64,000 nucleotides of DNA, taken from Euprymna scolopes. Taxonomy: Eukaryota. The DNA lies in NCBI GenBank assembly GCA_053919585.1, contig CM132809.1; one strand, written 5' to 3'. The first letter of the stretch is position 1, and the number at the start of each line of letters is the position of its first letter. Below the pieces are notes generated by a model that worked only from the letters and a program-made list of their open reading frames with translations, did no database searches and was not told where the DNA came from. The position numbers were made by a program, and so were the translations under genes. Shown one piece after another: positions 30,001 to 57,953 of this stretch.

Positions 30001-33000
30001 CAATTGTTCCAAGGAATATGACTTTTCCTCAGTGTTACTACTCATATGCATCGGTAGATTTGATTTCTCAGGACAGGAATACTCCAATTGTTCCAAGGAA
30101 TATGACTTTTCCTCAGTGTTACTTCTCATATGCATCGGTAGATTTGATTTCTCAGGACAGGAATACTCCAATTGTTCCAAGGAATATGACTTTTCCTCAG
30201 TGTTACTACTCATATGCATCGATAGATTTGATTTCTCAGGACAGGAATACTCCAATTGTTCCAAGGAATATGACTTTTCCTCAGTGTTACTACTCATATG
30301 CATCGATAGATTTGATTTCTCAGGACAGGAATACTCCAATTGTTCCAAGGAATGCTCCAATTCTTCCAAGGAATATGACTTTTCCGCAGGATTAGTACTC
30401 ATATGCATCGGTAGATTTGATTTCTCAGGACAGGAATACTCTAATTGTCCCAAGGAATATGACTTTTCCACAGTGTTACTACTCATATGCATCGATAGAT
30501 TTGATTTCTCAGGACAGGAATACTCCAATTGTTCCAAGGAATATGACTTTTCCTCAGTGTTACTACTCATATGCATCGATAGATTTGATTTCTCAGGACA
30601 GGAATACTCCAATTGTTCCAAGGAATATGACTTTTCCTCAGTGTTACTACTCATATGCATCGATAGATTTGATTTCTCAGGACAGGAATACTCCAATTGT
30701 TCCAAGGAATGCTCCAATTCTTCCAAGGAATATGACTTTTCCGCAGGATTAGTACTCATATGCATCGGTTGATTTGATTTCTCAGGACAGGAATACTCCA
30801 ATTGTTCCAAGGAATATGACTTTTCCTCAGTGTTACTACTCATATGCATCGGTAGATTTGATTTCTCAGGACAGGAATACTCCAATTGTTCCAAGGAATA
30901 TGATTTTTCCTCAGTGTTACTACTCATATGCATCGATAGATTTGATTTCTCAGGACAGGAATACTCCAATTGTTCCAAGGAATATGACTTTTCCTCAGTG
31001 TTACTACTCATATGCATCGATAGATTTGATTTCTCAGGACAGGAATACTCCAATTGTTCCAAGGAATATGACTTTTCCTCAGTGTTACTACTCATATGCA
31101 TCGGTAGATTTGATTTCTCAGGACAGGAATACTCCAATTGTTCCAAGGAATATGACTTTTCCTCAGTGTTACTACTCATATGCATCGGTAGATTTGATTT
31201 CTCAGGAAAGAAATACTCCAATTGTTCCAAGGAATATGACTTTTCCTCAGTGTTACTACTCATATGCATCGGTAGATTTGATTTCTCAGGAAAGAAATAC
31301 TCCAATTGTTCCAAGGAATATGACTTTTCCTCAGTGTTACTACTCATATGCATCGGTAGATTTGATTTCTCAGGACAGGAATACTCCAATTGTTCCAAGG
31401 AATATGACTTTTCCTCAGTGTTACTACTCATATGCATCGGAAGATTTGATTTCTCAGGACAGGAATACTCCAATTGTTCCAAGGAATATGACTTTTCCTC
31501 AGTGTTACTTCTCATATGCATCGGTAGATTTGATTTCTCAGGACAGGAATACTCCAATTGTTCCAAGGAATATGACTTTTCCTCAGTGTTACTACTCATA
31601 TGCATCGGTAGATTTGATTTCTCAGGAAAGAAATACTCCAATTGTTCCAAGGAATATGACTTTTCCTCAGTGTTACTACTCATATGCATCGGTAGATTTG
31701 ATTTCTCAGGACAGGAATACTCCAATTGTTCCAAGGAATATGACTTTTCCTCAGTGTTACTACTCATATGCATCGGTAGATTTGATTTCTCAGGACAGGA
31801 ATACTCCAATTGTTCCAAGGAATATGACTTTTCCTCAGTGTTACTACTCATATGCATCGATAGATTTGATTTCTCAGGACAGGAATACTCCAATTGTTCC
31901 AAGGAATATGACTTTTCCTCAGTGTTACTACTCATATGCATCGATGGATTTGATTTCTCAGGACAGGAATACTCCAATTGTTCCAAGGAATGCTCCAATT
32001 CTTCCAAGGAATATGACTTTTCCGCAGGATTAGTACTCATATGCATCGGTAGATTTGATTTCTCAGGACAGGAATACTCCAATTGTTCCAAGGAATATGA
32101 CTTTTCCTCAGTGTTACTACTCATATGCATCGGTAGATTTGATTTCTCAGGACAGGAATACTCCAATTGTTCCAAGGAATATGACTTTTCCTCAGTGTTA
32201 CTACTCATATGCATCGATAGATTTGATTTCTCAGGACAGGAATACTCCAATTGTTCCAAGGAATATGAATTTTCCTCAGGGTTTACTTCTCATATGCATC
32301 GATAGATTTGATTTCTCAGGACAGGAATACTCCAATTGTTCCAAGGAATGCTCCAATTCTTCCAAGGAATATGACTTTTCCGCAGGATTAGTACTCATAT
32401 GCATCGGTAGATTTGATTTCTCAGGACAGGAATACTCCAATTGTTCCAAGGAATATGACTTTTCCTCAGTGTTACTACTCATATGCATCGGTAGATTTGA
32501 TTTCTCAGGAAAGAAATACTCCAATTGTTCCAAGGAATATGACTTTTCCTCAGTGTTACTACTCATATGCATCGGTAGATTTGATTTCTCAGGACAGGAA
32601 TACTCCAATTGTTCCAAGGAATATGACTTTTCCTCAGTGTTACTACTCATATGCATCGATAGATTTGATTTCTCAGGACAGGAATACTCCAATTGTTCCA
32701 AGGAATATGACTTTTCCTCAGTGTTACTACTCATATGCATCGATAGATTTGATTTCTCAGGACAGGAATACTCCAATTGTTCCAAGGAATATGACTTTTC
32801 CTCCGTGTTACTACTCATATGCATCGGTAGATTTGATTTCTCAGGACAGAAATACTCCAATTGTTCCAAGGAATGCTCCAATTCTTCCAAGGAATATGAC
32901 TTTTCCGCAATGTTACTACTCATATGCATCGGTAGATTTGATTTCTCAGGACAGGAATACTCCAATTGTTCCAAGGAATATGACTTTTCCTCAGTGTTAT

Positions 33001-36000
33001 TACTCATAGGCATCGGTAGATTTGATTTCTCAGGACAGGTATACTCCAATTGTTCCAAGGAATATGACTTTTCCTCAGTGTTACTACTCATATGCATCGG
33101 TAGATTTGATTTCTCAGGAAAGAAATACTCCAATTGTTCCAAGGAATATGACTTTTCCTCAGTGTTACTACTCATATGCATCGGTAGATTTGATTTCTCA
33201 GGACAGGAATACTCCAATTGTTCCAAGGAATATGACTTTTCCTCAGTGTTACTACTCATATGCATCGGTAGATTTGATTTCTCAGGACAGGAATACTCCA
33301 ATTGTTCCAAGGAATATGACTTTTCCTCAGTGTTACTTCTCATATGCATCGGTAGATTTGATTTCTCAGGACAGGAATACTCCAATTGTTCCAAGGAATA
33401 TGACTTTTCCTCAGTGTTACTACTCATATGCATCGATAGATTTGATTTCTCAGGACAGGAATACTCCAATTGTTCCAAGGAATATGACTTTTCCTCAGTG
33501 TTACTACTCATATGCATCGATGGATTTGATTTCTCAGGACAGGAATACTCCAATTGTTCCAAGGAATGCTCCAATTCTTCCAAGGAATATGACTTTTCCG
33601 CAGGATTAGTACTCATATGCATCGGTAGATTTGATTTCTCAGGACAGGAATACTCCAATTGTTCCAAGGAATATGACTTTTCCTCAGTGTTACTACTCAT
33701 ATGCATCGGTAGATTTGATTTCTCAGGACAGGAATACTCCAATTGTTCCAAGGAATATGACTTTTCCTCAGTGTTACTACTCATATGCATCGATAGATTT
33801 GATTTCTCAGGACAGGAATACTCCAATTGTTCCAAGGAATATGAATTTTCCTCAGGGTTTACTTCTCATATGCATCGATAGATTTGATTTCTCAGGACAG
33901 GAATACTCCAATTGTTCCAAGGAATGCTCCAATTCTTCCAAGGAATATGACTTTTCCGCAGGATTAGTACTCATATGCATCGGTAGATTTGATTTCTCAG
34001 GACAGGAATACTCCAATTGTTCCAAGGAATATGACTTTTCCTCAGTGTTACTACTCATATGCATCGGTAGATTTGATTTCTCAGGAAAGAAATACTCCAA
34101 TTGTTCCAAGGAATATGACTTTTCCTCAGTGTTACTACTCATATGCATCGATAGATTTGATTTCTCAGGACAGGAATACTCCAATTGTTCCAAGGAATAT
34201 GACTTTTCCTCAGTGTTACTACTCATATGCATCGGTAGATTTGATTTCTCAGGAAAGAAATACTCCAATTGTTCCAAGGAATATGACTTTTCCTCAGTGT
34301 TACTACTCATATGCATCGGTAGATTTGATTTCTCAGGAAAGAAATACTCCAATTGTTCCAAGGAATATGACTTTTCCTCAGTGTTACTACTCATATGCAT
34401 CGGTAGATTTGATTTCTCAGGACAGGAATACTCCAATTGTTCCAAGGAATATGACTTTTCCTCAGTGTTACTACTCATATGCATCGGTAGATTTGATTTC
34501 TCAGGACAGGAATACTCCAATTGTTCCAAGGAATATGACTTTTCCTCAGTGTTACTTCTCATATGCATCGGTAGATTTGATTTCTCAGGACAGGAATACT
34601 CCAATTGTTCCAAGGAATATGACTTTTCCTCAGTGTTACTACTCATATGCATCGGTAGATTTGATTTCTCAGGAAAGAAATACTCCAATTCTTCCAAGGA
34701 ATATGACTTTTCCGCAGGATTAGTACTCATATGCATCGGTAGATTTGATTTCTCAGGACAGGAATACTCCAATTGTTCCAAGGAATATGACTTTTCCTCA
34801 GTGTTACTACTCATATGCATCGGTAGATTTGATTTCTCAGGACAGGAATACTCCAATTGTTCCAAGGAATATGACTTTTCCTCAGTGTTACTACTCATAT
34901 GCATCGATAGATTTGATTTCTCAGGACAGGAATACTCCAATTGTTCCAAGGAATATGACTTTTCCTCAGTGTTACTACTCATATGCATCGATGGATTTGA
35001 TTTCTCAGGACAGGAATACTCCAATTGTTCCAAGGAATGCTCCAATTCTTCCAAGGAATATGACTTTTCCGCAGGATTAGTACTCATATGCATCGGTAGA
35101 TTTGATTTCTCAGGACAGGAATACTCCAATTGTTCCAAGGAATATGACTTTTCCTCAGTGTTACTACTCATATGCATCGGTAGATTTGATTTCTCAGGAC
35201 AGGAATACTCCAATTGTTCCAAGGAATATGACTTTTCCTCAGTGTTACTACTCATATGCATCGATAGATTTGATTTCTCAGGACAGGAATACTCCAATTG
35301 TTCCAAGGAATATGAATTTTCCTCAGGGTTTACTTCTCATATGCATCGATAGATTTGATTTCTCAGGACAGGAATACTCCAATTGTTCCAAGGAATGCTC
35401 CAATTCTTCCAAGGAATATGACTTTTCCGCAGGATTAGTACTCATATGCATCGGTAGATTTGATTTCTCAGGACAGGAATACTCCAATTGTTCCAAGGAA
35501 TATGACTTTTCCTCAGTGTTACTACTCATATGCATCGGTAGATTTGATTTCTCAGGAAAGAAATACTCCAATTGTTCCAAGGAATATGACTTTTCCTCAG
35601 TGTTACTACTCATATGCATCGGTAGATTTGATTTCTCAGGACAGGAATACTCCAATTGTTCCAAGGAATATGACTTTTCCTCAGTGTTACTACTCATATG
35701 CATCGATAGATTTGATTTCTCAGGACAGGAATACTCCAATTGTTCCAAGGAATATGACTTTTCCTCAGTGTTACTACTCATATGCATCGATAGATTTGAT
35801 TTCTCAGGACAGGAATACTCCAATTGTTCCAAGGAATATGACTTTTCCTCCGTGTTACTACTCATATGCATCGGTAGATTTGATTTCTCAGGACAGAAAT
35901 ACTCCAATTGTTCCAAGGAATGCTCCAATTCTTCCAAGGAATATGACTTTTCCGCAATGTTACTACTCATATGCATCGGTAGATTTGATTTCTCAGGACA

Positions 36001-39000
36001 GGAATACTCCAATTGTTCCAAGGAATATGACTTTTCCTCAGTGTTATTACTCATAGGCATCGGTAGATTTGATTTCTCAGGACAGGTATACTCCAATTGT
36101 TCCAAGGAATATGACTTTTCCTCAGTGTTACTACTCATATGCATCGGTAGATTTGATTTCTCAGGAAAGAAATACTCCAATTGTTCCAAGGAATATGACT
36201 TTTCCTCAGTGTTACTACTCATATGCATCGGTAGATTTGATTTCTCAGGACAGGAATACTCCAATTGTTCCAAGGAATATGACTTTTCCTCAGTGTTACT
36301 ACTCATATGCATCGGTAGATTTGATTTCTCAGGACAGGAATACTCCAATTGTTCCAAGGAATATGACTTTTCCTCAGTGTTACTTCTCATATGCATCGGT
36401 AGATTTGATTTCTCAGGACAGGAATACTCCAATTGTTCCAAGGAATATGACTTTTCCTCAGTGTTACTACTCATATGCATCGATAGATTTGATTTCTCAG
36501 GACAGGAATACTCCAATTGTTCCAAGGAATATGACTTTTCCTCAGTGTTACTACTCATATGCATCGATGGATTTGATTTCTCAGGACAGGAATACTCCAA
36601 TTGTTCCAAGGAATGCTCCAATTCTTCCAAGGAATATGACTTTTCCGCAGGATTAGTACTCATATGCATCGGTAGATTTGATTTCTCAGGACAGGAATAC
36701 TCCAATTGTTCCAAGGAATATGACTTTTCCTCAGTGTTACTACTCATATGCATCGGTAGATTTGATTTCTCAGGACAGGAATACTCCAATTGTTCCAAGG
36801 AATATGACTTTTCCTCAGTGTTACTACTCATATGCATCGATAGATTTGATTTCTCAGGACAGGAATACTCCAATTGTTCCAAGGAATATGAATTTTCCTC
36901 AGGGTTTACTTCTCATATGCATCGATAGATTTGATTTCTCAGGACAGGAATACTCCAATTGTTCCAAGGAATGCTCCAATTCTTCCAAGGAATATGACTT
37001 TTCCGCAGGATTAGTACTCATATGCATCGGTAGATTTGATTTCTCAGGACAGGAATACTCCAATTGTTCCAAGGAATATGACTTTTCCTCAGTGTTACTA
37101 CTCATATGCATCGGTAGATTTGATTTCTCAGGAAAGAAATACTCCAATTGTTCCAAGGAATATGACTTTTCCTCAGTGTTACTACTCATATGCATCGGTA
37201 GATTTGATTTCTCAGGACAGGAATACTCCAATTGTTCCAAGGAATATGACTTTTCCTCAGTGTTACTACTCATATGCATCGATAGATTTGATTTCTCAGG
37301 ACAGGAATACTCCAATTGTTCCAAGGAATATGACTTTTCCTCAGTGTTACTACTCATATGCATCGATAGATTTGATTTCTCAGGACAGGAATACTCCAAT
37401 TGTTCCAAGGAATATGACTTTTCCTCCGTGTTACTACTCATATGCATCGGTAGATTTGATTTCTCAGGACAGAAATACTCCAATTGTTCCAAGGAATGCT
37501 CCAATTCTTCCAAGGAATATGACTTTTCCGCAATGTTACTACTCATATGCATCGGTAGATTTGATTTCTCAGGACAGGAATACTCCAATTGTTCCAAGGA
37601 ATATGACTTTTCCTCAGTGTTATTACTCATAGGCATCGGTAGATTTGATTTCTCAGGACAGGTATACTCCAATTGTTCCAAGGAATATGACTTTTCCTCA
37701 GTGTTACTACTCATATGCATCGGTAGATTTGATTTCTCAGGAAAGAAATACTCCAATTGTTCCAAGGAATATGACTTTTCCTCAGTTTTACTACTCATAT
37801 GCATCGGTAGATTTGATTTCTCAGGATAGGAATACTCCAATTGTTCCAAGGAATATGACTTTTCCTCAGTGTTACTACTCATATGAATCGATAGATTTGA
37901 TTTCTCAGGACAGGAATACTCCAATTGTTCCAAGGAATATGACTTTTCCTCAGTGTTACTACTCATATGCATCGGTAGATTTGATTTCTCAGGACAGGAA
38001 TTCTCCAATTGTTCCAAGGAATATGACTTTTCCGCAGTGTTACTACTCATATGCATCGGTAGATTTGATTTCTCAGGACAGGAATACTCCAATTGTTCCA
38101 AGGAATATGACTTTTCCTCAGTGTTACTACTCATATGCATCGGTAGATTTGATTTCTCAGGAAAGAAATACTCCAATTGTTCCAAGGAATATGACTTTTC
38201 CTCAGTGTTACTACTCATATGCATCGGTAGATTTGATTTCTCAGGACAGGAATTCTCCAATTGTTCCAAGGAATATGACTTTTCCGCAGTGTTACTACTC
38301 ATATGCATCGGTAGATTTGATTTCTCAGGACAGGAATACTCCAATTGTTCCAAGGAATATGACTTTTCCTCAGTGTTACTACTCATATGCATCGGTAGAT
38401 TTGATTTCTCAGGAAAGAAATACTCCAATTGTTCCAAGGAATATGACTTTTCCTCAGTGTTACTACTCATATGCATCGGTAGATTTTATTTCTCAGGACA
38501 GGTATACTCCAATTGTTCCAAGGAATATGACTTTTCCTCAGTGTTACTACTCATATGCATCGATAGATTTGATTTCTCAGGACAGGAATACTCCAATTGT
38601 TCCAAGGAATATGACTTTTCCTCAGTGTTACTACTCATATGCATCGATAGATTTGATTACTCAGGACAGGAATACTCCAATTGTTCCAAGGAATATGACT
38701 TTTCCTCAGTGTTACTACTTATATGCATTGGTAGATTTGATTTCTCAGGACAGGAATTCTCCAATTGTTCCAAGGAATATGACTTTTCCGCAGTGTTACT
38801 ACTCATATGCATCGGTAGATTTGATTTCTCAGGACAGGAATACTCCAATTGTTCCAAGGAATATGACTTTTCCTCAGTGTTACTACTCATATGCATCGAT
38901 AGATTTGATTTCTCAGGACAGGAATACTCCAATTGTTCCAAGGAATATGACTTTTCCGCAGTGTTACTACTCATATGCATCGATAGATTTGATTTCTCAG

Positions 39001-42000
39001 GACAGGAATACTCCAATTGTTCCAAGGAATATGACTTTTCCTCAGTGTTACTACTCATATGCATCGGTAGATTTGATTTCTCAGGACAGGAATACTCCAA
39101 TTGTTCCAAGGAATATGACTTTTCCTCAGTGTTACTACTCATATGCATCGGTAGATTTGATTTCTCAGGACAGGAATACTCCAATTGTTCCAAGGAATAT
39201 GACTTTTCCTCAGTGTTACTACTCATATGCATCGATAGATTTGATTTCTCAGGACAGGAATACTCCAATTGTTCCAAGGAATATGACTTTTCCTCAGTGT
39301 TACTACTCATATGCATCGATAGATTTGATTTCTCAGGACAGGAATACTCCAATTGTTCCAAGGAATGCTCCAATTCTTCCAAGGAATATGACTTTTCCGC
39401 AGGATTAGTACTCATATGCATCGGTAGATTTGATTTCTCAGGACAGGAATACTCTAATTGTCCCAAGGAATATGACTTTTCCGCAGTGTTACTACTCATA
39501 TGCATCGATAGATTTGATTTCTCAGGACAGGAATACTCCAATTGTTCCAAGGAATATGACTTTTCCTCAGTGTTACTACTCATATGCATCGATAGATTTG
39601 ATTTCTCAGGACAGGAATACTCCAATTGTTCCAAGGAATATGACTTTTCCTCAGTGTTACTACTCATATGCATCGATAGATTTGATTTCTCAGGACAGGA
39701 ATACTCCAATTGTTCCAAGGAATGCTCCAATTCTTCCAAGGAATATGACTTTTCCGCAGGATTAGTACTCATATGCATCGGTTGATTTGATTTCTCAGGA
39801 CAGGAATACTCCAATTGTTCCAAGGAATATGACTTTTCCTCAGTGTTACTACTCATATGCATCGGTAGATTTGATTTCTCAGGACAGGAATACTCCAATT
39901 GTTCCAAGGAATATGACTTTTCCTCAGTGTTACTACTCATATGCATCGATAGATTTGATTTCTCAGGACAGGAATACTCCAATTGTTCCAAGGAATATGA
40001 CTTTTCCTCAGTGTTACTACTCATATGCATCGATAGATTTGATTTCTCAGGACAGGAATACTCCAATTGTTCCAAGGAATATGACTTTTCCTCAGTGTTA
40101 CTACTCATATGCATCGGTAGATTTGATTTCTCAGGACAGGAATACTCCAATTGTTCCAAGGAATATGACTTTTCCTCAGTGTTACTACTCATATGCATCG
40201 GTAGATTTGATTTCTCAGGAAAGAAATACTCCAATTGTTCCAAGGAATATGACTTTTCCTCAGTGTTACTACTCATATGCATCGGTAGATTTGATTTCTC
40301 AGGAAAGAAATACTCCAATTGTTCCAAGGAATATGACTTTTCCTCAGTGTTACTACTCATATGCATCGGTAGATTTGATTTCTCAGGACAGGAATACTCC
40401 AATTGTTCCAAGGAATATGACTTTTCCTCAGTGTTACTACTCATATGCATCGGTAGATTTGATTTCTCAGGACAGGAATACTCCAATTGTTCCAAGGAAT
40501 ATGACTTTTCCTCAGTGTTACTTCTCATATGCATCGGTAGATTTGATTTCTCAGGACAGGAATACTCCAATTGTTCCAAGGAATATGACTTTTCCTCAGT
40601 GTTACTACTCATATGCATCGGTAGATTTGATTTCTCAGGAAAGAAATACTCCAATTGTTCCAAGGAATATGACTTTTCCTCAGTGTTACTACTCATATGC
40701 ATCGGTAGATTTGATTTCTCAGGACAGGAATACTCCAATTGTTCCAAGGAATATGACTTTTCCTCAGTGTTACTACTCATATGCATCGGTAGATTTGATT
40801 ACTCAGGACAGGAATACTCCAATTGTTCCAAGGAATATGACTTTTCCTCAGTGTTACTACTCATATGCATCGATAGATTTGATTTCTCAGGACAGGAATA
40901 CTCCAATTGTTCCAAGGAATATGACTTTTCCTCAGTGTTACTACTCATAGGCATCGATAGATTTGATTTCTCAGGACAGGAATACTCCAATTGTTCCAAG
41001 GAATGCTCCAATTCTTCCAAGGAATATGACTTTTCCGCAGGATTAGTACTCATATGCATCGGTAGATTTGATTTCTCAGGACAGGAATACTCCAATTGTT
41101 CCAAGGAATATGACTTTTCCTCAGTGTTACTACTCATATGCATCGGTAGATTTGATTTCTCAGGACAGGAATACTCCAATTGTTCCAAGGAATATGACTT
41201 TTCCTCAGTGTTACTACTCATATGCATCGATAGATTTGATTTCTCAGGACAGGAATACTCCAATTGTTCCAAGGAATATGACTTTTCCTCAGTGTTACTA
41301 CTCATATGCATCGATAGATTTGATTTCTCAGGACAGGAATACTCCAATTGTTCCAAGGAATGCTCCAATTCTTCCAAGGAATATGACTTTTCCGCAGGAT
41401 TAGTACTCATATGCATCGGTAGATTTGATTTCTCAGGACAGGAATACTCCAATTGTTCCAAGGAATATGACTTTTCCTCAGTGTTACTACTCATATGCAT
41501 CGGTAGATTTGATTTCTCAGGAAAGAAATACTCCAATTGTTCCAAGGAATATGACTTTTCCTCAGTGTTACTACTCATATGCATCGGTAGATTTGATTTC
41601 TCAGGACAGGAATACTCCAATTGTTCCAAGGAATATGACTTTTCCTCAGTGTTACTACTCATATGCATCGATAGATTTGATTTCTCAGGACAGGAATACT
41701 CCAATTGTTCCAAGGAATATGACTTTTCCTCAGTGTTACTACTCATATGCATCGGTAGATTTGATTTCTCAGGACAGGAATACTCCAATTGTTCCAAGGA
41801 ATATGACTTTTCCTCAGTGTTACTACTCATATGCATCGGTAGATTTGATTTCTCAGGACAGGAATACTCCAATTGTTCCAAGGAATATGACTTTTCCTCA
41901 GTGTTACTACTCATATGCATCGGTAGATTTGATTTCTCAGGAAAGAAATACTCCAATTGTTCCAAGGAATATGACTTTTCCTCAGTGTTACTACTCATAT

Positions 42001-45000
42001 GCATCGGTAGATTTGATTTCTCAGGAAAGAAATACTCCAATTGTTCCAAGGAATATGACTTTTCCTCAGTGTTACTACTCATATGCATCGATAGATTTGA
42101 TTTCTCAGGACAGGAATACTCCAATTGTTCCAAGGAATGCTCCAATTCTTCCAAGGAATATGACTTTTTCGCAGGATTAGTACTCATATGCATCGGTTGA
42201 TTTGATTTCTCAGGACAGGAATACTCCAATTGTTCCAAGGAATATGACTTTTCCTCAGTGTTACTACTCATATGCATCGGTAGATTTGATTTCTCAGGAC
42301 AGGAATACTCCAATTGTTCCAAGGAATATGACTTTTCCTCAGTGTTACTACTCATATGCATCGATAGATTTGATTTCTCAGGACAGGAATACTCCAATTG
42401 TTCCAAGGAATATGACTTTTCCTCAGTGTTACTACTCATATGCATCGATAGATTTGATTTCTCAGGACAGGAATACTCCAATTGTTCCAAGGAATGCTCC
42501 AATTGTTCCAAGGAATATGACTTTTCCTCAGTGTTACTACTCATATGCATCGGTAGATTTGATTTCTCAGGACAGGAATACTCCAATTGTTCCAAGGAAT
42601 ATGACTTTTCCTCAGTGTTACTACTCATATGCATCGGTAGATTTGATTTCTCAGGAAAGAAATACTCCAATTGTTCCAAGGAATATGACTTTTCCTCAGT
42701 GTTACTACTCATATGCATCGGTAGATTTGATTTCTCAGGAAAGAAATACTCCAATTGTTCCAAGGAATATGACTTTTCCTCAGTGTTACTACTCATATGC
42801 ATCGGTAGATTTGATTTCTCAGGACAGGAATACTCCAATTGTTCCAAGGAATATGACTTTTCCTCAGTGTTACTACTCATATGCATCGGTAGATTTGATT
42901 TCTCAGGACAGGAATACTCCAATTGTTCCAAGGAATATGACTTTTCCTCAGTGTTACTTCTCATATGCATCGGTAGATTTGATTTCTCAGGACAGGAATA
43001 CTCCAATTGTTCCAAGGAATATGACTTTTCCTCAGTGTTACTACTCATATGCATCGGTAGATTTGATTTCTCAGGAAAGAAATACTCCAATTGTTCCAAG
43101 GAATATGACTTTTCCTCAGTGTTACTACTCATATGCATCGGTAGATTTGATTTCTCAGGACAGGAATACTCCAATTGTTCCAAGGAATATGACTTTTCCT
43201 CAGTGTTACTACTCATATGCATCGGTAGATTTGATTACTCAGGACAGGAATACTCCAATTGTTCCAAGGAATATGACTTTTCCTCAGTGTTACTACTCAT
43301 ATGCATCGATAGATTTGATTTCTCAGGACAGGAATACTCCAATTGTTCCAAGGAATATGACTTTTCCTCAGTGTTACTACTCATAGGCATCGATAGATTT
43401 GACTTCTCAGGACAGGAATACTCCAATTGTTCCAAGGAATGCTCCAATTCTTCCAAGGAATATGACTTTTCCGCAGGATTAGTACTCATATGCATCGGTA
43501 GATTTGATTTCTCAGGACAGGAATACTCCAATTGTTCCAAGGAATATGACTTTTCCTCAGTGTTACTACTCATATGCATCGGTAGATTTGATTTCTCAGG
43601 ACAGGAATACTCCAATTGTTCCAAGGAATATGACTTTTCCTCAGTGTTACTACTCATATGCATCGATAGATTTGATTTCTCAGGACAGGAATACTCCAAT
43701 TGTTCCAAGGAATATGACTTTTCCTCAGTGTTACTACTCATATGCATCGATAGATTTGATTTCTCAGGACAGGAATACTCCAATTGTTCCAAGGAATGCT
43801 CCAATTCTTCCAAGGAATATGACTTTTCCGCAGGATTAGTACTCATATGCATCGGTAGATTTGATTTCTCAGGACAGGAATACTCCAATTGTTCCAAGGA
43901 ATATGACTTTTCCTCAGTGTTACTACTCATATGCATCGGTAGATTTGATTTCTCAGGAAAGAAATACTCCAATTGTTCCAAGGAATATGACTTTTCCTCA
44001 GTGTTACTACTCATATGCATCGGTAGATTTGATTTCTCAGGACAGGAATACTCCAATTGTTCCAAGGAATATGACTTTTCCTCAGTGTTACTACTCATAT
44101 GCATCGATAGATTTGATTTCTCAGGACAGGAATACTCCAATTGTTCCAAGGAATATGACTTTTCCTCAGTGTTACTACTCATATGCATCGGTAGATTTGA
44201 TTTCTCAGGACAGGAATACTCCAATTGTTCCAAGGAATATGACTTTTCCTCAGTGTTACTACTCATATGCATCGGTAGATTTGATTTCTCAGGACAGGAA
44301 TACTCCAATTGTTCCAAGGAATATGACTTTTCCTCAGTGTTACTACTCATATGCATCGGTAGATTTGATTTCTCAGGAAAGAAATACTCCAATTGTTCCA
44401 AGGAATATGACTTTTCCTCAGTGTTACTACTCATATGCATCGGTAGATTTGATTTCTCAGGAAAGAAATACTCCAATTGTTCCAAGGAATATGACTTTTC
44501 CTCAGTGTTACTACTCATATGCATCGGTAGATTTGATTTCTCAGGACAGGAATACTCCAATTGTTCCAAGGAATATGACTTTTCCTCAGTGTTACTACTC
44601 ATATGCATCGGTAGATTTGATTTCTCAGGACAGGAATACTCCAATTGTTCCAAGGAATATGACTTTTCCTCAGTGTTACTACTCATATGCATCGGTAGAT
44701 TTGATTTCTCAGGACAGGAATACTCCAATTGTTCCAAGGAATATGACTTTTCCTCAGTGTTACTACTCATATGCATCGGTAGATTTGATTTCTCAGGACA
44801 GGAATACTCCAATTGTTCCAAGGAATATGACTTTTCCTCAGTGTTACTACTCATATGCATCGGTAGATTTGATTTCTCAGGACAGGAATACTCCAATTGT
44901 TCCAAGGAATATGACTTTTCCTCAGTGTTACTACTCATATGCATCGGTAGATTTGATTTCTCAGGACAGGAATACTCCAATTGTTCCAAGGAATATGACT

Positions 45001-48000
45001 TTTCCTCAGTGTTACTACTCATATGCATCGGTAGATTTGATTTCTCAGGACAGAAATACTCCAATTGTTCCAAGGAATGCTCCAATTGTTCCAAGGAATA
45101 TGACTTTTCCTCAGTGTTACTACTCATAGGCATCGGTAGATTTGATTTCTCAGGACAGGAATACTCCAATTGTTCCAAGGAATATGACTTTTCCTCAGTG
45201 TTACTACTCATATGCATCGGTAGATTTGATTTCTCAGGAAAGAAATACTCCAATTGTTCCAAGGAATATGACTTTTCCTCAGTGTTACTACTCATATGCA
45301 TCGGTAGATTTGATTTCTCAGGACAGGAATACTCCAATTGTTCCAAGGAATATGACTTTTCCTCAGTGTTACTACTCATATGCATCGGTAGATTTGATTT
45401 CTCAGGACAGGAATACTCCAATTGTTCCAAGGAATATGACTTTTCCTCAGTGTTACTATTCATATGCATCGATAGATTTGATTTCTCAGGACAGGAATAC
45501 TCCAATTGTTCCAAGGAATATGACTTTTCCTCAGTGTTACTACTCATATGCATCGATAGATTTGATTTCTCAGGACAGGAATACTCCAATTGTTCCAAGG
45601 AATATGACTTTTCCTCAGTGTTACTACTCATATGCATCGGTAGATTTGATTTCTCAGGAAAGAAATACTCCAATTGTTCCAAGGAATATGACTTTTCCTC
45701 AGTGTTACTACTCATATGCATCGGTAGATTTGATTTCTCAGGACAGGAATACTCCAATTGTTCCAAGGAATATGACTTTTCCTCAGTGTTACTACTCATA
45801 TGCATCGGTAGATTTGATTTCTCAGGACAGGAATACTCCAATTGTTCCAAGGAATATGACTTTTCCTCAGTGTTACTACTCATATGCATCGGTAGATTTG
45901 ATTTCTCAGGACAGGAATACTCCAATTGTTCCAAGGAATATGACTTTTCCTCAGTGTTACTACTCATATGCATCGGTAGATTTGATTTCTCAGGACAGGA
46001 ATACTCCAATTGTTCCAAGGAATATGACTTTTCCTCAGTGTTACTACTCATATGCATCGGTAGATTTGATTTCTCAGGACAGGAATACTCCAATTGTTCC
46101 AAGGAATATGACTTTTCCTCAGTGTTACTACTCATATGCATCGGTAGATTTGATTTCTCAGGACAGGAATACTCCAATTGTTCCAAGGAATATGACTTTT
46201 CCTCAGTATTACTACTCATATGCATCGGTAGATTTGATTTCTCAGGACAGGAATACTCCAATTGTTCCAAGGAATATGACTTTTCCTCAGTGTTACTACT
46301 CATATGCATCGGTAGATTTGATTTCTCAGGAAAGAAATACTCCAATTGTTCCAAGGAATATGACTTTTCCTCAGTGTTACTACTCATATGCATCGGTAGA
46401 TTTGATTTCTCAGGAAAGAAATACTCCAATTGTTCCAAGGAATATGACTTTTCCTCAGTGTTACTACTCATATGCATCGGTAGATTTGATTTCTCAGGAC
46501 AGGAATACTCCAATTGTTCCAAGGAATATGACTTTTCCTCAGTGTTACTACTCATATGCATCGGTAGATTTGATTTCTCAGGACAGGAATACTCCAATTG
46601 TTCCAAGGAATATGACTTTTCCTCAGTGTTACTTCTCATATGCATCGGTAGATTTGATTTCTCAGGACAGGAATACTCCAATTGTTCCAAGGAATATGAC
46701 TTTTCCTCAGTGTTACTACTCATATGCATCGGTAGATTTGATTTCTCAGGAAAGAAATACTCCAATTGTTCCAAGGAATATGACTTTTCCTCAGTGTTAC
46801 TACTCATATGCATCGGTAGATTTGATTTCTCAGGACAGGAATACTCCAATTGTTCCAAGGAATATGACTTTTCCTCAGTGTTACTACTCATATGCATCGG
46901 TAGATTTGATTTCTCAGGACAGGAATACTCCAATTGTTCCAAGGAATATGACTTTTCCTCAGTGTTACTACTCATATGCATCGATAGATTTGATTTCTCA
47001 GGACAGGAATACTCCAATTGTTCCAAGGAATATGACTTTTCCTCAGTGTTACTACTCATATGCATCGATAGATTTGATTTCTCAGGACAGGAATACTCCA
47101 ATTGTTCCAAGGAATGCTCCAATTCTTCCAAGGAATATGACTTTTCCGCAGGATTAGTACTCATATGCATCGGTAGATTTGATTTCTCAGGACAGGAATA
47201 CTCTAATTGTCCCAAGGAATATGACTTTTCCGCAGTGTTACTACTCATATGCATCGATAGATTTGATTTCTCAGGACAGGAATACTCCAATTGTTCCAAG
47301 GAATATGACTTTTCCTCAGTGTTACTACTCATATGCATCGATAGATTTGATTTCTCAGGACAGGAATACTCCAATTGTTCCAAGGAATATGACTTTTCCT
47401 CAGTGTTACTACTCATATGCATCGATAGATTTGATTTCTCAGGACAGGAATACTCCAATTGTTCCAAGGAATGCTCCAATTCTTCCAAGGAATATGACTT
47501 TTCCGCAGGATTAGTACTCATATGCATCGGTTGATTTGATTTCTCAGGACAGGAATACTCCAATTGTTCCAAGGAATATGACTTTTCCTCAGTGTTACTA
47601 CTCATATGCATCGGTAGATTTGATTTCTCAGGACAGGAATACTCCAATTGTTCCAAGGAATATGACTTTTCCTCAGTGTTACTACTCATATGCATCGATA
47701 GATTTGATTTCTCAGGACAGGAATACTCCAATTGTTCCAAGGAATATGACTTTTCCTCAGTGTTACTACTCATATGCATCGATAGATTTGATTTCTCAGG
47801 ACAGGAATACTCCAATTGTTCCAAGGAATATGACTTTTCCTCAGTGTTACTACTCATATGCATCGGTAGATTTGATTTCTCAGGACAGGAATACTCCAAT
47901 TGTTCCAAGGAATATGACTTTTCCTCAGTGTTACTACTCATATGCATCGGTAGATTTGATTTCTCAGGAAAGAAATACTCCAATTGTTCCAAGGAATATG

Positions 48001-50781
48001 ACTTTTCCTCAGTGTTACTACTCATATGCATCGGTAGATTTGATTTCTCAGGAAAGAAATACTCCAATTGTTCCAAGGAATATGACTTTTCCTCAGTGTT
48101 ACTACTCATATGCATCGGTAGATTTGATTTCTCAGGACAGGAATACTCCAATTGTTCCAAGGAATATGACTTTTCCTCAGTGTTACTACTCATATGCATC
48201 GGTAGATTTGATTTCTCAGGACAGGAATACTCCAATTGTTCCAAGGAATATGACTTTTCCTCAGTGTTACTTCTCATATGCATCGGTAGATTTGATTTCT
48301 CACGACAGGAATACTCCAATTGTTCCAAGGAATATGACTTTTCCTCAGTGTTACTACTCATATGCATCGGTAGATTTGATTTCTCAGGAAAGAAATACTC
48401 CAATTGTTCCAAGGAATATGACTTTTCCTCAGTGTTACTACTCATATGCATCGGTAGATTTGATTTCTCAGGACAGGAATACTCCAATTGTTCCAAGGAA
48501 TATGACTTTTCCTCAGTGTTACTACTCATATGCATCGGTAGATTTGATTTCTCAGGACAGGAATACTCCAATTGTTCCAAGGAATATGACTTTTCCTCAG
48601 TGTTACTACTCATATGCATCGATAGATTTGATTTCTCAGGACAGGAATACTCCAATTGTTCCAAGGAATATGACTTTTCCTCAGTGTTACTACTCATATG
48701 CATCGATAGATTTGATTTCTCAGGACAGGAATACTCCAATTGTTCCAAGGAATGCTCCAATTCTTCCAAGGAATATGACTTTTCCGCAGGATTAGTACTC
48801 ATATGCATCGGTAGATTTGATTTCTCAGGACAGGAATACTCCAATTGTTCCAAGGAATATGACTTTTCCTCAGTGTTACTACTCATATGCATCGGTAGAT
48901 TTGATTTCTCAGGACAGGAATACTCCAATTGTTCCAAGGAATATGACTTTTCCTCAGTGTTACTACTCATATGCATCGATAGATTTGATTTCTCAGGACA
49001 GGAATACTCCAATTGTTCCAATGAATATGAATTTTCCTCCGTGTTACTACTCATATGCATCGGTAGATTTGATTTCTCAGGACAGAAATACTCCAATTGT
49101 TCCAAGGAATGCTCCAATTCTTCCAAGGAATATGACTTTTCCGCAATGTTACTACTCATATGCATCGGTAGATTTGATTTCTCAGGACAGGAATACTCCA
49201 ATTGTTCCAAGGAATATGACTTTTCCTCAGTGTTATTACTCATAGGCATCGGTAGATTTGATTTCTCAGGACAGGTATACTCCAATTGTTCCAAGGAATA
49301 TGACTTTTCCTCAGTGTTACTACTCATATGCATCGGTAGATTTGATTTCTCAGGAAAGAAATACTCCAATTGTTCCAAGGAATATGACTTTTCCTCAGTG
49401 TTACTACTCATATGCATCGGTAGATTTGATTTCTCAGGACAGGAATACTCCAATTGTTCCAAGGAATATGACTTTTCCTCAGTGTTACTACTCATATGCA
49501 TCGATAGATTTGATTTCTCAGGACAGGAATACTCCAATTGTTCCAAGGAATATGACTTTTCCTCAGTGTTACTACTCATATGCATCGGTAGATTTGATTT
49601 CTCAGGACAGGAATTCTCCAATTGTTCCAAGGAATATGACTTTTCCGCAGTGTTACTACTCATATGCATCGGTAGATTTGATTTCTCAGGACAGGAATAC
49701 TCCAATTGTTCCAAGGAATATGACTTTTCCTCAGTGTTACTACTCATATGCATCGGTAGATTTGATTTCTCAGGAAAGAAATACTCCAATTGTTCCAAGG
49801 AATATGACTTTTCCTCAGTGTTACTACTCATATGCATCGGTAGATTTGATTTCTCAGGACAGGAATTCTCCAATTGTTCCAAGGAATATGACTTTTCCGC
49901 AGTGTTACTACTCATATGCATCGGTAGATTTGATTTCTCAGGACAGGAATACTCCAATTGTTCCAAGGAATATGACTTTTCCTCAGTGTTACTACTCATA
50001 TGCATCGGTAGATTTGATTTCTCAGGAAAGAAATACTCCAATTGTTCCAAGGAATATGACTTTTCCTCAGTGTTACTACTCATATGCATCGGTAGATTTT
50101 ATTTCTCAGGACAGGTATACTCCAATTGTTCCAAGGAATATGACTTTTCCTCAGTGTTACTACTCATATGCATCGATAGATTTGATTTCTCAGGACAGGA
50201 ATACTCCAATTGTTCCAAGGAATATGACTTTTCCTCAGTGTTACTACTCATATGCATCGATAGATTTGATTACTCAGGACAGGAATACTCCAATTGTTCC
50301 AAGGAATATGACTTTTCCTCAGTGTTACTACTCATATGCATTGGTAGATTTGATTTCTCAGGACAGGAATTCTCCAATTGTTCCAAGGAATATGACTTTT
50401 CCGCAGTGTTACTACTCATATGCATCGGTAGATTTGATTTCTCAGGACAGGAATACTCCAATTGTTCCAAGGAATATGACTTTTCCTCAGTGTTACTACT
50501 CATATGCATCGATAGATTTGATTTCTCAGGACAGGAATACTCCAATTGTTCCAAGGAATATGACTTTTCCGCAGTGTTACTACTCATATGCATCGATAGA
50601 TTTGATTTCTCAGGACAGAAATACTCCAATTGTTCCAAGGAATATGACTTTTCCTCAGTGTTAGTACTCATATGCATCGATAGATTTGATTTCTCAGGAC
50701 AGGAATACTCCAATTGTTCCAAGGAATATGACTTTTCCTCGGTGTTACTACTCATATGCATCGGTAGATTTGATTTCTCAG
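1..50781. repeat. 84-bp tandem satellite array (~594 monomers, truncated by left window edge), derived from a C2H2 zinc-finger coding unit on the minus strand
   Basis: Consensus AGTGTTACTACTCATATGCATCG(G/A)TAGATTTGATTTCTCAGGACAGGAATACTCCAATTGTTCCAAGGAATATGACTTTTCCTC repeats head-to-tail with typically 0-4 substitutions per unit. The phase of the last unit start (50741) fits 594x84 + 40x21 + 4 exactly. The right boundary at 50781 is sharp. Confidence 0.99.
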
Positions 50782-51290
50782 ATTTGGTTTGTCCAGAATG
50801 AGTTCTTACAGGTTTCTCTTGATTTGATTAATCAGAACAAACAGTTTAACACCAATCCTTATATGTTTTGCTGAATTTGATTCATAAGAATAACAAATTT
50901 CAAATGAATCCTCAGCGTGGATTATCATATGTCGCATTAGATTTTATCTCTGAGAAAAAAAAATCGATGCACACATTATACAAAAATAAGAGTTTTCTCT
51001 TGTGTGGTTCATAATATTTTGCACTAGATTATTTTCTGAGAAGTGGAACATTCACAACTAAACAACAATATGGTTTATATTTACTGTGTACTTGTAGGTT
51101 TCAGTATTTTCTCATGACCAATTATTCAGGATTTTTTCTAGAAAATATAGGAATTTGAGATATATTCCTGCCACAGATGTCGGTTTATATCTTCCAAACA
51201 CCAATATGATTTTCTCTGTAGCAAATATTAAAGAAAATATAGACTCGTTCAGATTCAACAAAAGCGTTCAAGCAGGAACATCTGCAAAGA
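50782..51290 (-). pseudogene. Decayed C2H2 (Kruppel-type) zinc-finger gene remnant adjoining the satellite
   Basis: Manual minus-strand translation gives HSKYKPYCC (51088-51062), CECSTSQK (51056-51033), NLVQNIMNHTRENSYFCIMCASIFFSQR*NLMRHMIIH (to 50917) and VCSD*SNQEKPVRTHSGQTKS, which runs in frame into the satellite EKSNLPMH. Terminal His codons are 82 and 87 bp apart (84 with small indels). There are in-frame stops at 50944-46 and 50828-30 plus frameshifts. A possible splice acceptor TTTTTTCTTTGCAG ends at 51282. Confidence 0.85.
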
Positions 51291-53813
51291 AAAAATATAT
51301 AATTAACTTTTTTCACTTATTGCCAATATTATTTTAAGTGATTTTTGTAATAAAATATTTTTTTTATTTTTATCGTTATTGAATTTCTTTGACTCTTCAT
51401 GAAAATTATTTAGAGATTTCACTTTTATGTTGACACAATAATAACTATGATGATTATCTTTTCTATTGATACAATCATAACTATGATGAATATCTCCGTT
51501 ATTTGCGTCTAATTTTGTCATATTCCAAATGTATCATCAGCTATAACTGGCCTTTCTTTCGAACTTTATAATTCATACATTATATTAATCATTGTAAAAA
51601 AAAAAACAGAATATTCTGCGTTTCCTTCTCGTGAGGATTCGTCAGTTTTGTAAGTTTTGTTCGCTATTTCTCTGCTACAGGTTAATACATGTTTTTTTTT
51701 TAAGAATAGGATAGAAAATCATTCATTTAGGCATAATATACATAGATCGGCTAGGTTCCTACATGTACTTGCTTGTCTTTAAGTTCCCAGTATTGGTTTG
51801 CTAGTTCTGTTTTCTTTCCGTTTTGTTTTTGAACGTACTTTTAAGGTTATAATACTTAGTTTTAAAATCTAATGGCGGTCATACACGACATAGGAAACTG
51901 ACAAATTCAACTAAGTTTTTTTAGTTAAATAAATTAATTATAAAAATCACTTGAGGTAAATATTTGTTTTCTGTGATATTTTCAAACACAATTAATAATC
52001 AAAGATACTGAGAAAAAAAAACACCTTATTTCTACAAAAATAGCTTAATAAGCCCCGAAAAGCTAAGGTTTAGTAACATCCAACGTTTTGCATTATCGAA
52101 ATAAACGAAAAGATGCCGTGCATAAATTGTACGGAAGCCGAGAATGTCAGAAAGTCTACTTATTTTAAAATTTATTGACGAATTGAAACATTACTATAAG
52201 TTAATTTCAGTATGTTTGAAGATTATAAAACATTTGTGTCGAATTTTTGAAGTATGCTTTGATGTAATTGTTATGTTAATTTCTTGATACTGTTTTGGAG
52301 CAAAAACAGCGGAGATAAAATATCTCACAAGAGACAAAGGTTAAGACAGTTCCCTTCGTAACAGTATTTTAGATGGTCACAATGTAGGTGTTCAATTTTG
52401 TAGAACGTTATAAATTACAACTACTCACGACGATAAAGTCATTGGCATTTTTTTAAATCGGAAAATTTCGACTATCTAAACATGGAACAAGAATGATAAA
52501 ATTTAGTGAAATTTAGAAATGGAGGTAATTTCATAAACATCCGCCGTTTTTTGTGTTCTCGTCCCGGACACCAATAAAAAAAAACAGAAAGAAAAGTTTC
52601 TTCAGTTGCATGAATTAATATTTTAAATGAACGAATTTGAATTGAAAACATTACGTGCATACCAATCATGCAGAAATTAATGAAGTATAAATTCCAGAAA
52701 TTATGAAAAATTAATCGATAGAAAATAATTACAAGATAATAGTGTTTGTATAGATGAATAGTCGTTTAAAACCAACGCATTTCAGATTTAAAAACATTAC
52801 GTACTTACGTGTCATTTCAAAATTAGCATAAGTTCTTCAATTTACCCATAATGATCCAGTAAATGTGATAAATGTATTTTTAACAATAAGCATCCACAAT
52901 TACGTTCTATTTGAAAAAGGGGAACCTTTTAATTTTAGGCAATGTATGTCAAGTGAGGTAAGACAGTTTTTCATACTGAATTGGTCTCATAACTCTTCCA
53001 CATTAAAACATACGATAAAACACAATAATTCGAGAAGTTCTATTATACTTGAAATTATTTTTAATAGATCATATTTTTCGTAATTTTAAAAATTTATAAT
53101 TATTTTTACATGACAGGTAAGTACGCATAAAATCACGAATTTACACATGAACCAGTGTGACTTTGTTTATGTAGGGAAATTCTGGGCAAAAAACATTTTT
53201 ATACCAAAAATAGAAAAATGTAAAAATGAAAATGTTTCATTCACTATTGCTGGCAATTAGTTTTTTTTTTTTTACTTTTGGGTCATTTTTTACTCTGGAT
53301 TATAGAAATAATTATATTTTTGTTTCCATCCGAAATAAAAAAAAAAAATCATTTCAACTTAAAATTTTTTTCTCAAAATGGTTTAATAATAAAATCTCGT
53401 ATTTTTGTAAACCGAATTTTGTAGTTGATAATTTGATTTTTTTATTAGATCTGAATTCGAAATAGAAATCCAATTGTATACACATAATTACTTAATGTAA
53501 CAGTAATGGACATATCCAAAAGTAGAATATTAATGAAAATATGTTTCGATTACAATTAACGAAAAAAATTGAGATTTGATAAATAAAAAAAAAAACTGTA
53601 TCCGTAACAAAGCTTTTTTTTTCCTGCAAGTTTAGCAAATTGTTGCTATGTCAGCAGAAATCACGTTTCGCTAATTATTTTTGCACTTGTTTTCAATAAT
53701 AATTTTTTTACTTTATTTTTTTGGTGATTTTTTTCATTACTGCGACATGATTATTAAGTAGATTTCATTGGTTTTACTTAAAATTCAATATTTCCATTTT
53801 AAAAGTTATATAT

Positions 53814-53894
53814 TTACGAAAATCGAGAAGGTAGACAAAGAAAATCATACATAGAATTTGATGAAAACGATCATAAACACAAATTTCGGTACTT
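53814..53894 (+). repeat. Dispersed repeat fragment, copy 1 (copy 2 at 55722-55791; related inverted piece near 57040-57076)
   Basis: TTACGAAAATCGAGAAGGTAGA..AAAGAAAA..TACATAGAAT..GATGAAAACGATCATAAA..TTTCGGTACTT is shared between copies with small indels. Confidence 0.75.
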
Positions 53895-54572
53895 TAGGTG
53901 TATCAGAATTTTTGTAGGAATTTTTGACACCCCTAACACGAAACGGCGAATAAAATATAAAAACACTCGTAATTTCTGTTAAAAGTGGGTTATTTACTTT
54001 CTTTATGGATTATACTTCCAAAATAAACTAATGGAGTTGTTTTAAAAGTAATAGAAATATTTAAAAAAAAAAAAAAAACTAATGAATTTTCCGAACTCAA
54101 TATTTTTTCAATTTTTAAACTTTAAAAATCTATCAAAATTTTTCTATTGATTCTATTTTTACGATATTTTCAGGGTCAATGTGAAATTTTATGTTCTTTC
54201 CAGTAAACCGAATATAATATTGTAGACAAACGTTTTTTTTTTTAATTCACGCCCCCCCCCCATTTTCCAGTTTCTCTTAAATAAATAATTAATTTACTCA
54301 CAAATTGAAGAGAAAAAGGTCAATAAATAATATATTCAAATTTAAAACAAAAAAAAGGTTTTTTTAGGTATTTACCTTTAAAGTCCGAAGTTTAAAACCT
54401 TTGTTTAAAAAATAAAAAAAAAAGTTTTTTTTTGTTTAATGAAACCTTGGTCCTTTAATTGAAAATAAAAAATTAGGGCTTGAATTACATTTTTCGAGCA
54501 GTTATAAGCTTGGAAAGATGGGGTGGAATTATGCACTATTTTCACGAAATTTCTGACACCTACTTATGCAGA

Positions 54573-55791: not shown

Positions 55792-55798
55792 ACGCAGA

Positions 55799-57902: not shown

Positions 57903-57953
<51 letters not shown>

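What the first reader, a model, noticed from the sequence alone, without database searches (positions are those of the whole stretch)
50782..51290. The parent locus is still attached: zinc-finger pseudogene fused in frame to the array edge
Seen: upstream of the array on the minus strand are successive decayed fingers, including one with all four ligands (YFCIMCASIFFSQR*NLMRHMIIH, 50988-50917) and linkers HSKYKPY, HTRENSY and RTHSGQ. The last remnant runs in frame into the first monomer. DNA homology is direct: 50911-50955 matches the monomer at 30/45 positions ungapped, and 50821-50839 at 16/19. None of this appears in the ORF track because of stops and frameshifts. Inference: the satellite arose in situ inside the finger exon of this gene, so its birthplace is preserved.
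Basis: partly seen in the sequence, partly recalled or inferred. Interest (0 to 1): 0.88.

Follow-up and report, generated by a model that had tools for sequence, protein, structure and literature searches.

The report
Dead zinc-finger gene beside finger-derived satellite
A satellite DNA array of over 50 kb, whose 84-base unit is a zinc-finger coding unit that lost its zinc-binding residues, directly abuts a short run of broken zinc fingers on the same strand, so it very probably grew out of a dead zinc-finger gene, though it is not proven that this was the exact birthplace.

Summary

A frameshift- and stop-tolerant C2H2 profile alignment scores the flank 40.5 bits. Shuffles give 12.9±2.0 (0 of 300 reach it) and 84 control tiles reach at most 18.8. 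The signal covers two full fingers at 51088-50917. By DNA collinearity, two or three truncated units follow down to 50782. Nothing finger-like lies in 51090-51290.

The satellite monomer is itself finger-derived: 9,962 protein hits, best E 2.9e-95, and all nine checked are poly-C2H2 proteins. It has lost three of its four zinc ligands.

Same strand, direct contact and cyclic collinearity make origin from a finger exon at this locus the best reading (about 0.6). Five points count against certainty:
- The junction is ragged, with a 30-nt phase jump.
- Identity drops abruptly from 98% to about 55-65%.
- Only the last 15 codons are in frame.
- At protein level the flank fingers are no closer to the monomer than random fingers are.
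- Similar arrays are noted elsewhere in this genome.

The scan has met this array before. Its other end (s1-268937, untested here) is said to carry intact-looking fingers, and 84-bp arrays described in similar terms are noted on other pieces.

The parts
1..50781 (-). 84-bp satellite array: 594 units in the window (550 of 84 bp, 40 of 105 bp, 4 of 85 bp), 98-99% identical to the consensus. The minus-strand monomer reads EKSNLPMHMSSNTEEKSYSLEQLEYSCP, a 28-codon C2H2 unit with L, L, H, N at the four ligand columns.
   Evidence: TRF; segmentation and per-column residues; profile score of 90.7 bits for 4 units, z=37, ungapped and in finger register; protein searches hit only C2H2 proteins.
50782..50850 (-). 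Junction-proximal truncated unit(s). 50843-50814 is collinear with monomer phases 77-22 (CSD*SNQEK against CPEKSNLPM). There is a TAA stop at 50830-50828, then RTHSGQTK (finger end plus linker) in the array's frame. The last 18 nt also resemble the monomer start (14/17 by eye). The array restarts at phase 1, so about 30 nt of a unit are missing.
   Evidence: Phase map; 16/19 count; profile score of 15.8 bits, reached by 6 of 300 shuffles; stop coordinates.
50851..50916 (-). Shortened finger-like unit AEDSFEICYSYESNSAKHIRIG (66 nt, about 18 nt missing). Its linker shares the rare E (column 1) and S (column 4) with the monomer linker TEEKSY.
   Evidence: Translation; phase map hit at 50882-50861, phases 7-8; rare-state frequencies of 4.4% and 3.9%.
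50917..51003 (-). The best-preserved finger: TRENSY-F-C-IM-C-ASIFFSQR*NLMR-H-MII-H. All four ligands are present. It is disabled by a TAA stop at 50946-50944 and an extra codon at 50964-50962, which gives C-x13-H spacing.
   Evidence: Profile alignment path; tblastn against real zinc-finger proteins; 30/45 DNA match to the monomer.
51004..51088 (-). Finger with linker HSKYKPY, two Cys, and N/H at the His columns. Reading it needs two -1 frameshifts (near 51057 and 51034).
   Evidence: Profile alignment path; phase map hits at 51053 and 51005.
51089..51281 (-). No detectable finger or monomer similarity. It could be the pre-finger part of the same exon, or unrelated DNA.
   Evidence: Profile score of 10.9 bits, z about 0; no phase hits; Pfam finds nothing.
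51282..51295 (-). Splice-acceptor-like TTTTTTCTTTGCAG. This is weak evidence in AT-rich DNA.
   Evidence: Sequence; not tested statistically.

Best explanation
The first ~300 bases right of the array (50782-51088, minus strand) are the decayed 5' part of a poly-C2H2 zinc-finger exon. It holds two recognisable fingers and then two or three truncated ones.

The 84-bp satellite that begins at 50781 is built from one 28-codon finger unit. That unit had already lost three of its four zinc ligands when the present array was homogenised.

The most likely history has three steps:
1. A tandem finger-coding exon is itself an 84-bp coding minisatellite. This one lost its function.
2. Unequal exchange or replication slippage between its units then ran away without selection. 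One dead unit was amplified and homogenised into hundreds of copies, with 105-bp variants arranged in higher-order repeats.
3. The neighbouring fingers, left outside the exchange zone, kept decaying by point mutations, frameshifts and deletions. The array edge itself was later eroded.

Shown: the finger nature of both the flank and the monomer, and their contact, strand and collinearity. Inferred: the order of events, and that the amplified unit came from this very exon.
For: - Flank as fingers: 40.5 bits against 12.9±2.0 for shuffles (0 of 300 reach it), with control tiles at most 18.8. tblastn gives its best hits of the whole flank here.
- Monomer as finger: 9,962 hits, best E 2.9e-95. All nine checked hits are poly-C2H2. 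The profile alignment is ungapped, 90.7 bits over 4 units.
- Ligand columns are L/L/H/N in more than 96% of 550 units, so the amplified unit was already dead.
- Collinearity: phase hits run 72, 37, 80...26, 7, 77...2 and then the array, with 27 windows against 0.59 expected. nhmmer hits occur only at the array edge and on the same strand.
- Flank DNA is closer to the monomer than 49 fingers of four unrelated zinc-finger genes of similar GC content. The best 45-nt match is 31 against at most 29, and there are 7.3 against 0.3-2.4 phase hits per 84 nt.
- The rare Ser at linker column 4 (3.9% of database fingers) is shared by the monomer and two flank linkers.
- No other finger signal occurs in the remaining 12.7 kb.
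Against: - The junction is out of phase by 30 nt, and identity falls at once from 98% to about 55-65% with no gradient.
- Monomer-to-flank protein identity (8/28, 7/28) equals the average for arbitrary fingers. In-register DNA identity of the best finger (46/84) lies inside the foreign range, whose maximum is 49.
- The decay patterns differ strongly. Outside the ligand columns the monomer scores 35.5 bits (live fingers 43.6±15.4), while the flank fingers score 5.5 and 11.5 yet keep 7 of 8 ligands.
- Pfam does not call the stop-free pieces.
- Other 84-bp zinc-finger-like arrays are noted on other pieces of this genome.
- No upstream exon or domain was found.
Confidence: 0.58

Rival explanations
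1. The satellite was born in a different, paralogous zinc-finger gene. It reached this place by non-allelic recombination between finger exons, or by segmental duplication of an array with its flanks. On this view the flank fingers are only paralogues of the true parent.
For: - Protein-level kinship to the monomer is no better than for random fingers.
- The junction is out of phase.
- The flank and the monomer show different decay patterns.
- Notes report 84-bp zinc-finger-like arrays on other pieces of this genome (untested).
Against: - The flank and the array share strand and cyclic collinearity.
- The local DNA similarity exceeds that of foreign fingers.
- The rare Ser at linker column 4 is shared.
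- The far edge is also said to carry fingers (untested), which would fit one split exon more simply.
Confidence: 0.22
2. The flank units are relics of the earliest satellite monomers, amplified when the unit still had its ligands and stranded at the edge. They are not parental fingers that never took part in amplification. The origin would still be local.
For: - The units are collinear and become progressively truncated toward the array (86, 66, 53, 54 nt).
- Array edges commonly keep old monomers (general knowledge of satellite DNA).
Against: - There is no gradient at this edge. The ten nearest units are 98.0% identical to the consensus, and finger-like minority states do not cluster here.
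- The flank units differ from each other as much as ordinary neighbouring fingers do.
Confidence: 0.15
3. The adjacency is coincidence or an assembly join. An unrelated satellite happens to lie beside a zinc-finger pseudogene fragment, or was placed there by misassembly.
For: The change in identity at 50781/50782 is abrupt. Read support could not be checked.
Against: - The satellite is itself finger-derived.
- The strand and the cyclic phase order are shared with the flank.
- Finger signal occurs nowhere else in the 13 kb flank.
- By inference, finger exons make up a tiny fraction of a genome.
Confidence: 0.04

Closest known systems
Coding minisatellites of C2H2 arrays, such as the PRDM9 zinc-finger exon (PMC3890296, found)
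   Same: The repeat is 84 bp, one finger per unit. Turnover by unequal exchange or slippage between units is the mechanism proposed here.
   Different: PRDM9 arrays are short (about 8-20 units), translated, keep all their ligands and are under selection. This array has at least 594 units in the window, has lost 3 of 4 ligands, contains 85-bp frameshifting units and stops, and is not a gene.
Satellites traced to a single-copy progenitor, such as CapA from a NOS1AP intron (as cited in PMC8210747). Satellites seeded by rDNA spacers or transposons belong here too (review PMC5615363).
   Same: A large homogenised array can be traced back to a recognisable non-satellite sequence.
   Different: The seed here is a protein-coding repeat unit, and candidate parental units are still in contact with the array. 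I found no report of a finger-exon seed in the held literature. That search is limited.
Tandem repeats or satellites linked to C2H2 gene clusters: beta-satellite in human chromosome 19 ZNF clusters, and a 70-90 bp tandem repeat near octopus C2H2 genes. Both are from my memory. The octopus genome paper is not held.
   Same: Satellite-like repeats are physically associated with expanded C2H2 gene families. The 84-bp unit falls within the 70-90 bp range.
   Different: As I recall them, those reports describe association, not derivation of the repeat from the finger coding sequence. I could not check this, and the species of this window is not known to me.

Membership tests
C2H2 zinc finger (flank units 50917-51088) | Ligand pattern C-x2-4-C-x12-H-x3-5-H | tested here: inconclusive
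   50988-50917 has C-x2-C-x13-H-x3-H, with one extra codon and an internal TAA. The upstream unit has C, C, N, H after two frameshift corrections.
C2H2 zinc finger (flank units 50917-51088) | Significant match to a finger profile | tested here: met
   My own frameshift-aware profile, built from 2,593 real fingers, gives 40.5 bits against 12.9±2.0 for shuffles (0 of 300 reach it). tblastn gives E about 5e-4. Pfam on the stop-free pieces finds nothing above its cut-offs.
C2H2 zinc finger (flank units 50917-51088) | TGEKP-type linker and a 28-residue period | tested here: met
   The linkers are SKYKPY, TRENSY and AED-SF. Column 0 falls at 51003 and 50916, 87 nt apart including the one extra codon.
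Functional zinc-finger gene | Uninterrupted reading frame | tested here: not met
   There are two frameshifts, stops at 50946-50944 and 50830-50828, and deletions of 18-31 nt. It is a pseudogene fragment.
C2H2 zinc finger (satellite monomer) | Homology to C2H2 fingers | tested here: met
   9,962 hits, best E 2.9e-95. All nine checked hits are poly-C2H2 proteins. The profile alignment is ungapped, about 23 bits per unit.
C2H2 zinc finger (satellite monomer) | Four zinc ligands | tested here: not met
   The ligand columns read L (543 of 550), L (546), H (532) and N (544).
Satellite DNA | Long head-to-tail array of homogenised, non-coding monomers | tested here: met
   The array covers 50.8 kb in the window and runs off its left end. 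It has 594 units at 98-99% identity, with 105-bp variants and frameshifting 85-bp units. Every frame contains stops.
Progenitor-satellite pair born in situ | The flank continues seamlessly, in phase, into the first repeat unit | tested here: not met
   The last flank unit ends near phase 54 and the array starts at phase 1, so 30 nt are missing.
Progenitor-satellite pair born in situ | An unexpanded orthologous locus in related species, and the monomer's nearest relatives are the flanking units | not testable with these tools
Two metagenome scans for the monomer found nothing.

The most novel reading that the evidence does not exclude
This array totals about 84 kb if the earlier notes are right. 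On the most novel reading it sits inside one former zinc-finger exon, and both halves of that exon survive at its two ends. It would then be one instance of a recurrent route in this genome, in which 84-bp finger-coding minisatellites escape selection and grow into true satellites. The step from exon to satellite could then be read directly at several loci.
Probability: 0.4. Interest if true: 0.7.

Novelty: new variant of a known kind. Interest (0 to 1): 0.55.

Why it matters
Where satellite DNA families come from is seldom visible, because homogenisation erases the seed. Here the seed can be identified as a protein-coding repeat unit, and candidate parental units still touch the array.

If the two ends prove to be halves of one exon, three things could be measured at this locus: which unit was picked, how dead it already was, and how the edges erode. 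It would also link two well-studied phenomena, the instability of finger-coding minisatellites and the birth of satellites. And it may explain why tandem repeats accompany expanded C2H2 gene families.

Tried and rejected
- Pfam on the stop-free pieces of the flank found nothing above its cut-offs. The best finger is split by its stop.
- Strict local DNA alignment of the flank against the tandem consensus gave only z=2.7. I replaced it with nhmmer and a phase map.
- The protein-level kinship test between monomer and flank fingers gave no signal beyond generic finger similarity.
- I looked for an edge gradient, or for ancestral states clustering at the array edge, and found none.
- Pfam on nine ORFs in 51303-62995 found no domains, so no upstream exon was identified.
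- Two metagenome scans for the monomer gave 0 matches.
- Identifying the taxon through relatives of the LINE fragment failed.
- The related ENA contig L005 holds no copy of the satellite.
- The octopus genome paper is not held, so my recollection of a 70-90 bp repeat near C2H2 genes is unverified.
- A gapped reading of the monomer would be TEEKSYS, then a 21-nt insert, then CPE, with seven columns deleted. I considered it, but flank DNA collinearity favours the ungapped reading (my own nucleotide comparison from the and 5 sequences; see notebook entry 3). The question remains open.

Full report
**What is there.** Positions 1-50781 are one tandem array with an 84-bp period, and it runs off the left end of the window (TRF). 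I cut it into 594 units: 550 of 84 bp, 40 of 105 bp (84 plus a 21-bp internal duplication) and 4 of 85 bp. The 84-bp units are 98-99% identical to the consensus everywhere, including the ten nearest the right edge (98.0%). On the minus strand one frame of the consensus reads EKSNLPMHMSSNTEEKSYSLEQLEYSCP. That is 28 codons, the period of tandem C2H2 fingers.

**The monomer is a dead finger.**
- A 420-residue translation of the array found only four proteins in the word-indexed database. All four are C2H2 proteins, best E 2.1e-12.
- An exhaustive phmmer of 185 residues (junction plus six units) found 9,962 proteins at E≤0.001 and 180 at E≤1e-30, best 2.9e-95.
- All nine top hits that I checked are canonical poly-C2H2 proteins, with zf-H2C2_2 E-values down to 1e-122. 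They come from moths, a fish and a frog. The ancestry is therefore clear but generic.
- I built a 28-column profile from 2,593 distinct fingers of those hits. Against it, four satellite units align without gaps for 90.7 bits, z=37.
- The four ligand columns read L, L, H, N in 543, 546, 532 and 544 of 550 units. The unit was therefore already non-functional before the present array was homogenised.
- All six frames of the array contain stops, and the 85-bp units shift the frame. It is not a gene.

- The three minus-strand translations show exactly the peptides quoted.
- The two DNA counts are exact: 30/45 for 50911-50955 and 16/19 for 50821-50839.
- Pfam on the stop-free pieces gave nothing above its cut-offs.
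It is a cyclic 28-column profile aligned to DNA, with penalties for frameshifts, stops and codon indels.
- The flank 50782-51300 scores 40.5 bits. 300 dinucleotide shuffles give 12.9±2.0 with a maximum of 20.0, and 84 control tiles of the rest of the window, both strands, reach at most 18.8.
- The alignment path runs from 51076 to 50908 and covers two fingers in register.
  - The first is KPYCC..C.., and reading it needs two -1 frameshifts. Its ligand columns are C, C, N, H.
  - The second is TRENSYFCIMCAS(I)FFSQR*NLMRHMIIH. It has all four ligands, one extra codon (50964-50962) and a TAA stop (50946-50944).
- tblastn with real zinc-finger proteins independently puts its best hits of the whole 13.2-kb flank at 50866-51094, E about 5e-4.
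- The stretch 50782-50915 alone is marginal: 15.8 bits, reached by 6 of 300 shuffles, matching RTHSGQTK. 51077-51300 has no signal.

**DNA relation of flank and monomer.**
- An nhmmer profile of the monomer hits only 50801-51067, on the array's strand, in the 13.2-kb flank (E 5e-4 and 7e-4).
- A phase map of 21-nt ungapped windows against every cyclic phase of the monomer gives 27 windows at 15/21 or better. Control DNA predicts 0.59.
- The hits are collinear in cyclic order. Phase 1 recurs at about 51040, 50954, 50888, 50835 and 50781. That gives successive units of about 86, 66, 53 and 54 nt, followed by the regular 84-nt array.
- The flank is therefore a run of units in the same order and orientation as the array, increasingly truncated toward it.

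**What limits the 'birthplace' claim.**
1. The junction is not seamless. The last flank unit reaches about phase 54 and the array restarts at phase 1, so 30 nt are missing. The last 18 flank bases can also be read as a stuttered partial copy of the monomer start (14/17, counted by eye).
2. 'In frame' is true only for the 15 codons after the TAA at 50830-50828. The two solid fingers are in another frame.
3. There is no edge gradient. Identity falls from 98% to about 55-65% at one point, and finger-like minority states do not cluster at this edge (for example, Phe at the conserved-Phe column in 85 of 550 units).
4. Protein identity between the monomer and the two flank fingers is 8/28 and 7/28. 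The average for database fingers is 7.7±1.9.
5. On the same profile and outside the ligand columns, the monomer scores 35.5 bits, close to live fingers at 43.6±15.4. The flank fingers score 5.5 and 11.5 yet retain 7 of 8 ligands. This fits a unit 'frozen' by homogenisation while its neighbours decayed, but it also shows very different histories. The profile is somewhat biased toward the monomer, because its source proteins were found with the monomer as query.

**What favours a specific relation.**
- I fetched the DNA of four unrelated zinc-finger genes with GC content of 32-39% and compared their 49 fingers with the monomer.
  - Their best 45-nt ungapped match is 23-26 on average, at most 29. 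The flank gives 31.
  - Their phase hits are 0.3-2.4 per finger. The flank gives 7.3 per 84 nt.
  - In-register identity of the best flank finger (46/84) is only at the top of the foreign range (means 37-44.5, maximum 49).
- The rare Ser at linker column 4 (3.9% of database fingers) is shared by the monomer and two flank linkers. The rare Glu at column 1 (4.4%) is shared with one.
- No other finger signal exists in the remaining 12.7 kb, and no domain was found in nine upstream ORFs.
- An acceptor-like TTTTTTCTTTGCAG at 51295-51282 could mark the start of the exon. This is weak evidence in AT-rich DNA.

**Context from the scan (leads, not evidence).**
- Earlier notes call this a mollusc genome.
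- They place the far end of this same array about 33 kb left of my window, which makes it about 84 kb in all.
- They say that end is joined in frame to three intact-looking fingers.
- They list 84-bp zinc-finger-like arrays on other pieces of the genome.
- If the far-edge note holds, the array sits inside one finger exon, and the stretch studied here is its 5' half. The other arrays leave open which locus, if any, is the original.
- I could test neither point. Two metagenome scans for the monomer were empty, and no public protein resembles the monomer above 41% identity.

**Comparison with what is known.**
- Finger-coding exons are known to behave as 84-bp coding minisatellites, as in PRDM9 (PMC3890296).
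- Reviews list rDNA spacers and transposons as seeds of satellites (PMC5615363).
- A satellite born from a gene intron, CapA from NOS1AP, is cited in PMC8210747.
- I found no report of a large non-coding satellite grown from a finger exon. The library is partial.
- My recollection that the octopus genome paper reported a 70-90 bp tandem repeat enriched beside C2H2 genes could not be checked.

**Verdict.**
A finger-derived satellite in contact with a dead finger stretch is established. Birth in this very exon is the most economical reading (about 0.6) but is not demonstrated.
- It is a new variant of a known kind of event, of moderate to good interest.

Noticed in passing
window 1-50781: 40 of the 594 units are 105 bp long, that is 84 bp plus a duplicated 21-nt segment (minus strand CCTTGGAACAATTGGAGTATT). 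The segment is flanked by TATTCC direct repeats, and the variants recur at regular spacings, which indicates higher-order repeats. Four 85-bp units at 36942, 35366, 33895 and 32319 recur about every 1.5 kb.
   Followed up: partly
window 47592-50801 (+) and the minus frames: Very long ORFs run through the array on both strands (1,069 aa on the plus strand; up to 4,731 aa on the minus strand). They are a by-product of the homogeneity of a unit that happens to lack stops, not evidence of a gene.
   Followed up: yes
window 1-50781, finger columns 7, 10 and 14: Both former Cys codons of the monomer are now the same Leu codon, TTG, two changes away from TGT. The rest of the finger scaffold is nearly intact (35.5 bits, against 43.6 for live fingers). 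85 of 550 units carry Phe (TTT) at the conserved-Phe column where the majority has Cys (TGT). The selective loss of ligands is unexplained.
   Followed up: partly
window 54769-55287 (+) and 62485-62935 (-): Two fragments carry the C-terminal part of a non-LTR retrotransposon reverse transcriptase, in opposite orientations. The first has 212 relatives at E≤1e-5, some of them carrying PF00078, with best identity 89%.
   Followed up: partly
window 63664-64000: A 33-nt tandem repeat is open in several frames (for example KRREKEGKRNQPFQR repeated) and runs off the right end of the window. A (TC)n tract lies at 63265-63386 and a (TA)n tract at 59954-60158.
   Followed up: no
window 61219-61493 and 51422-51495: Two short tandem arrays: a 35-bp unit with about 8 copies at 61219-61493, and a 36-bp unit with about 2 copies just upstream of the finger remnant at 51422-51495.
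   Followed up: no
window 60679-60826 and 61942-62106: Two runs of N (148 and 165 bases). I left them as they are.
   Followed up: no
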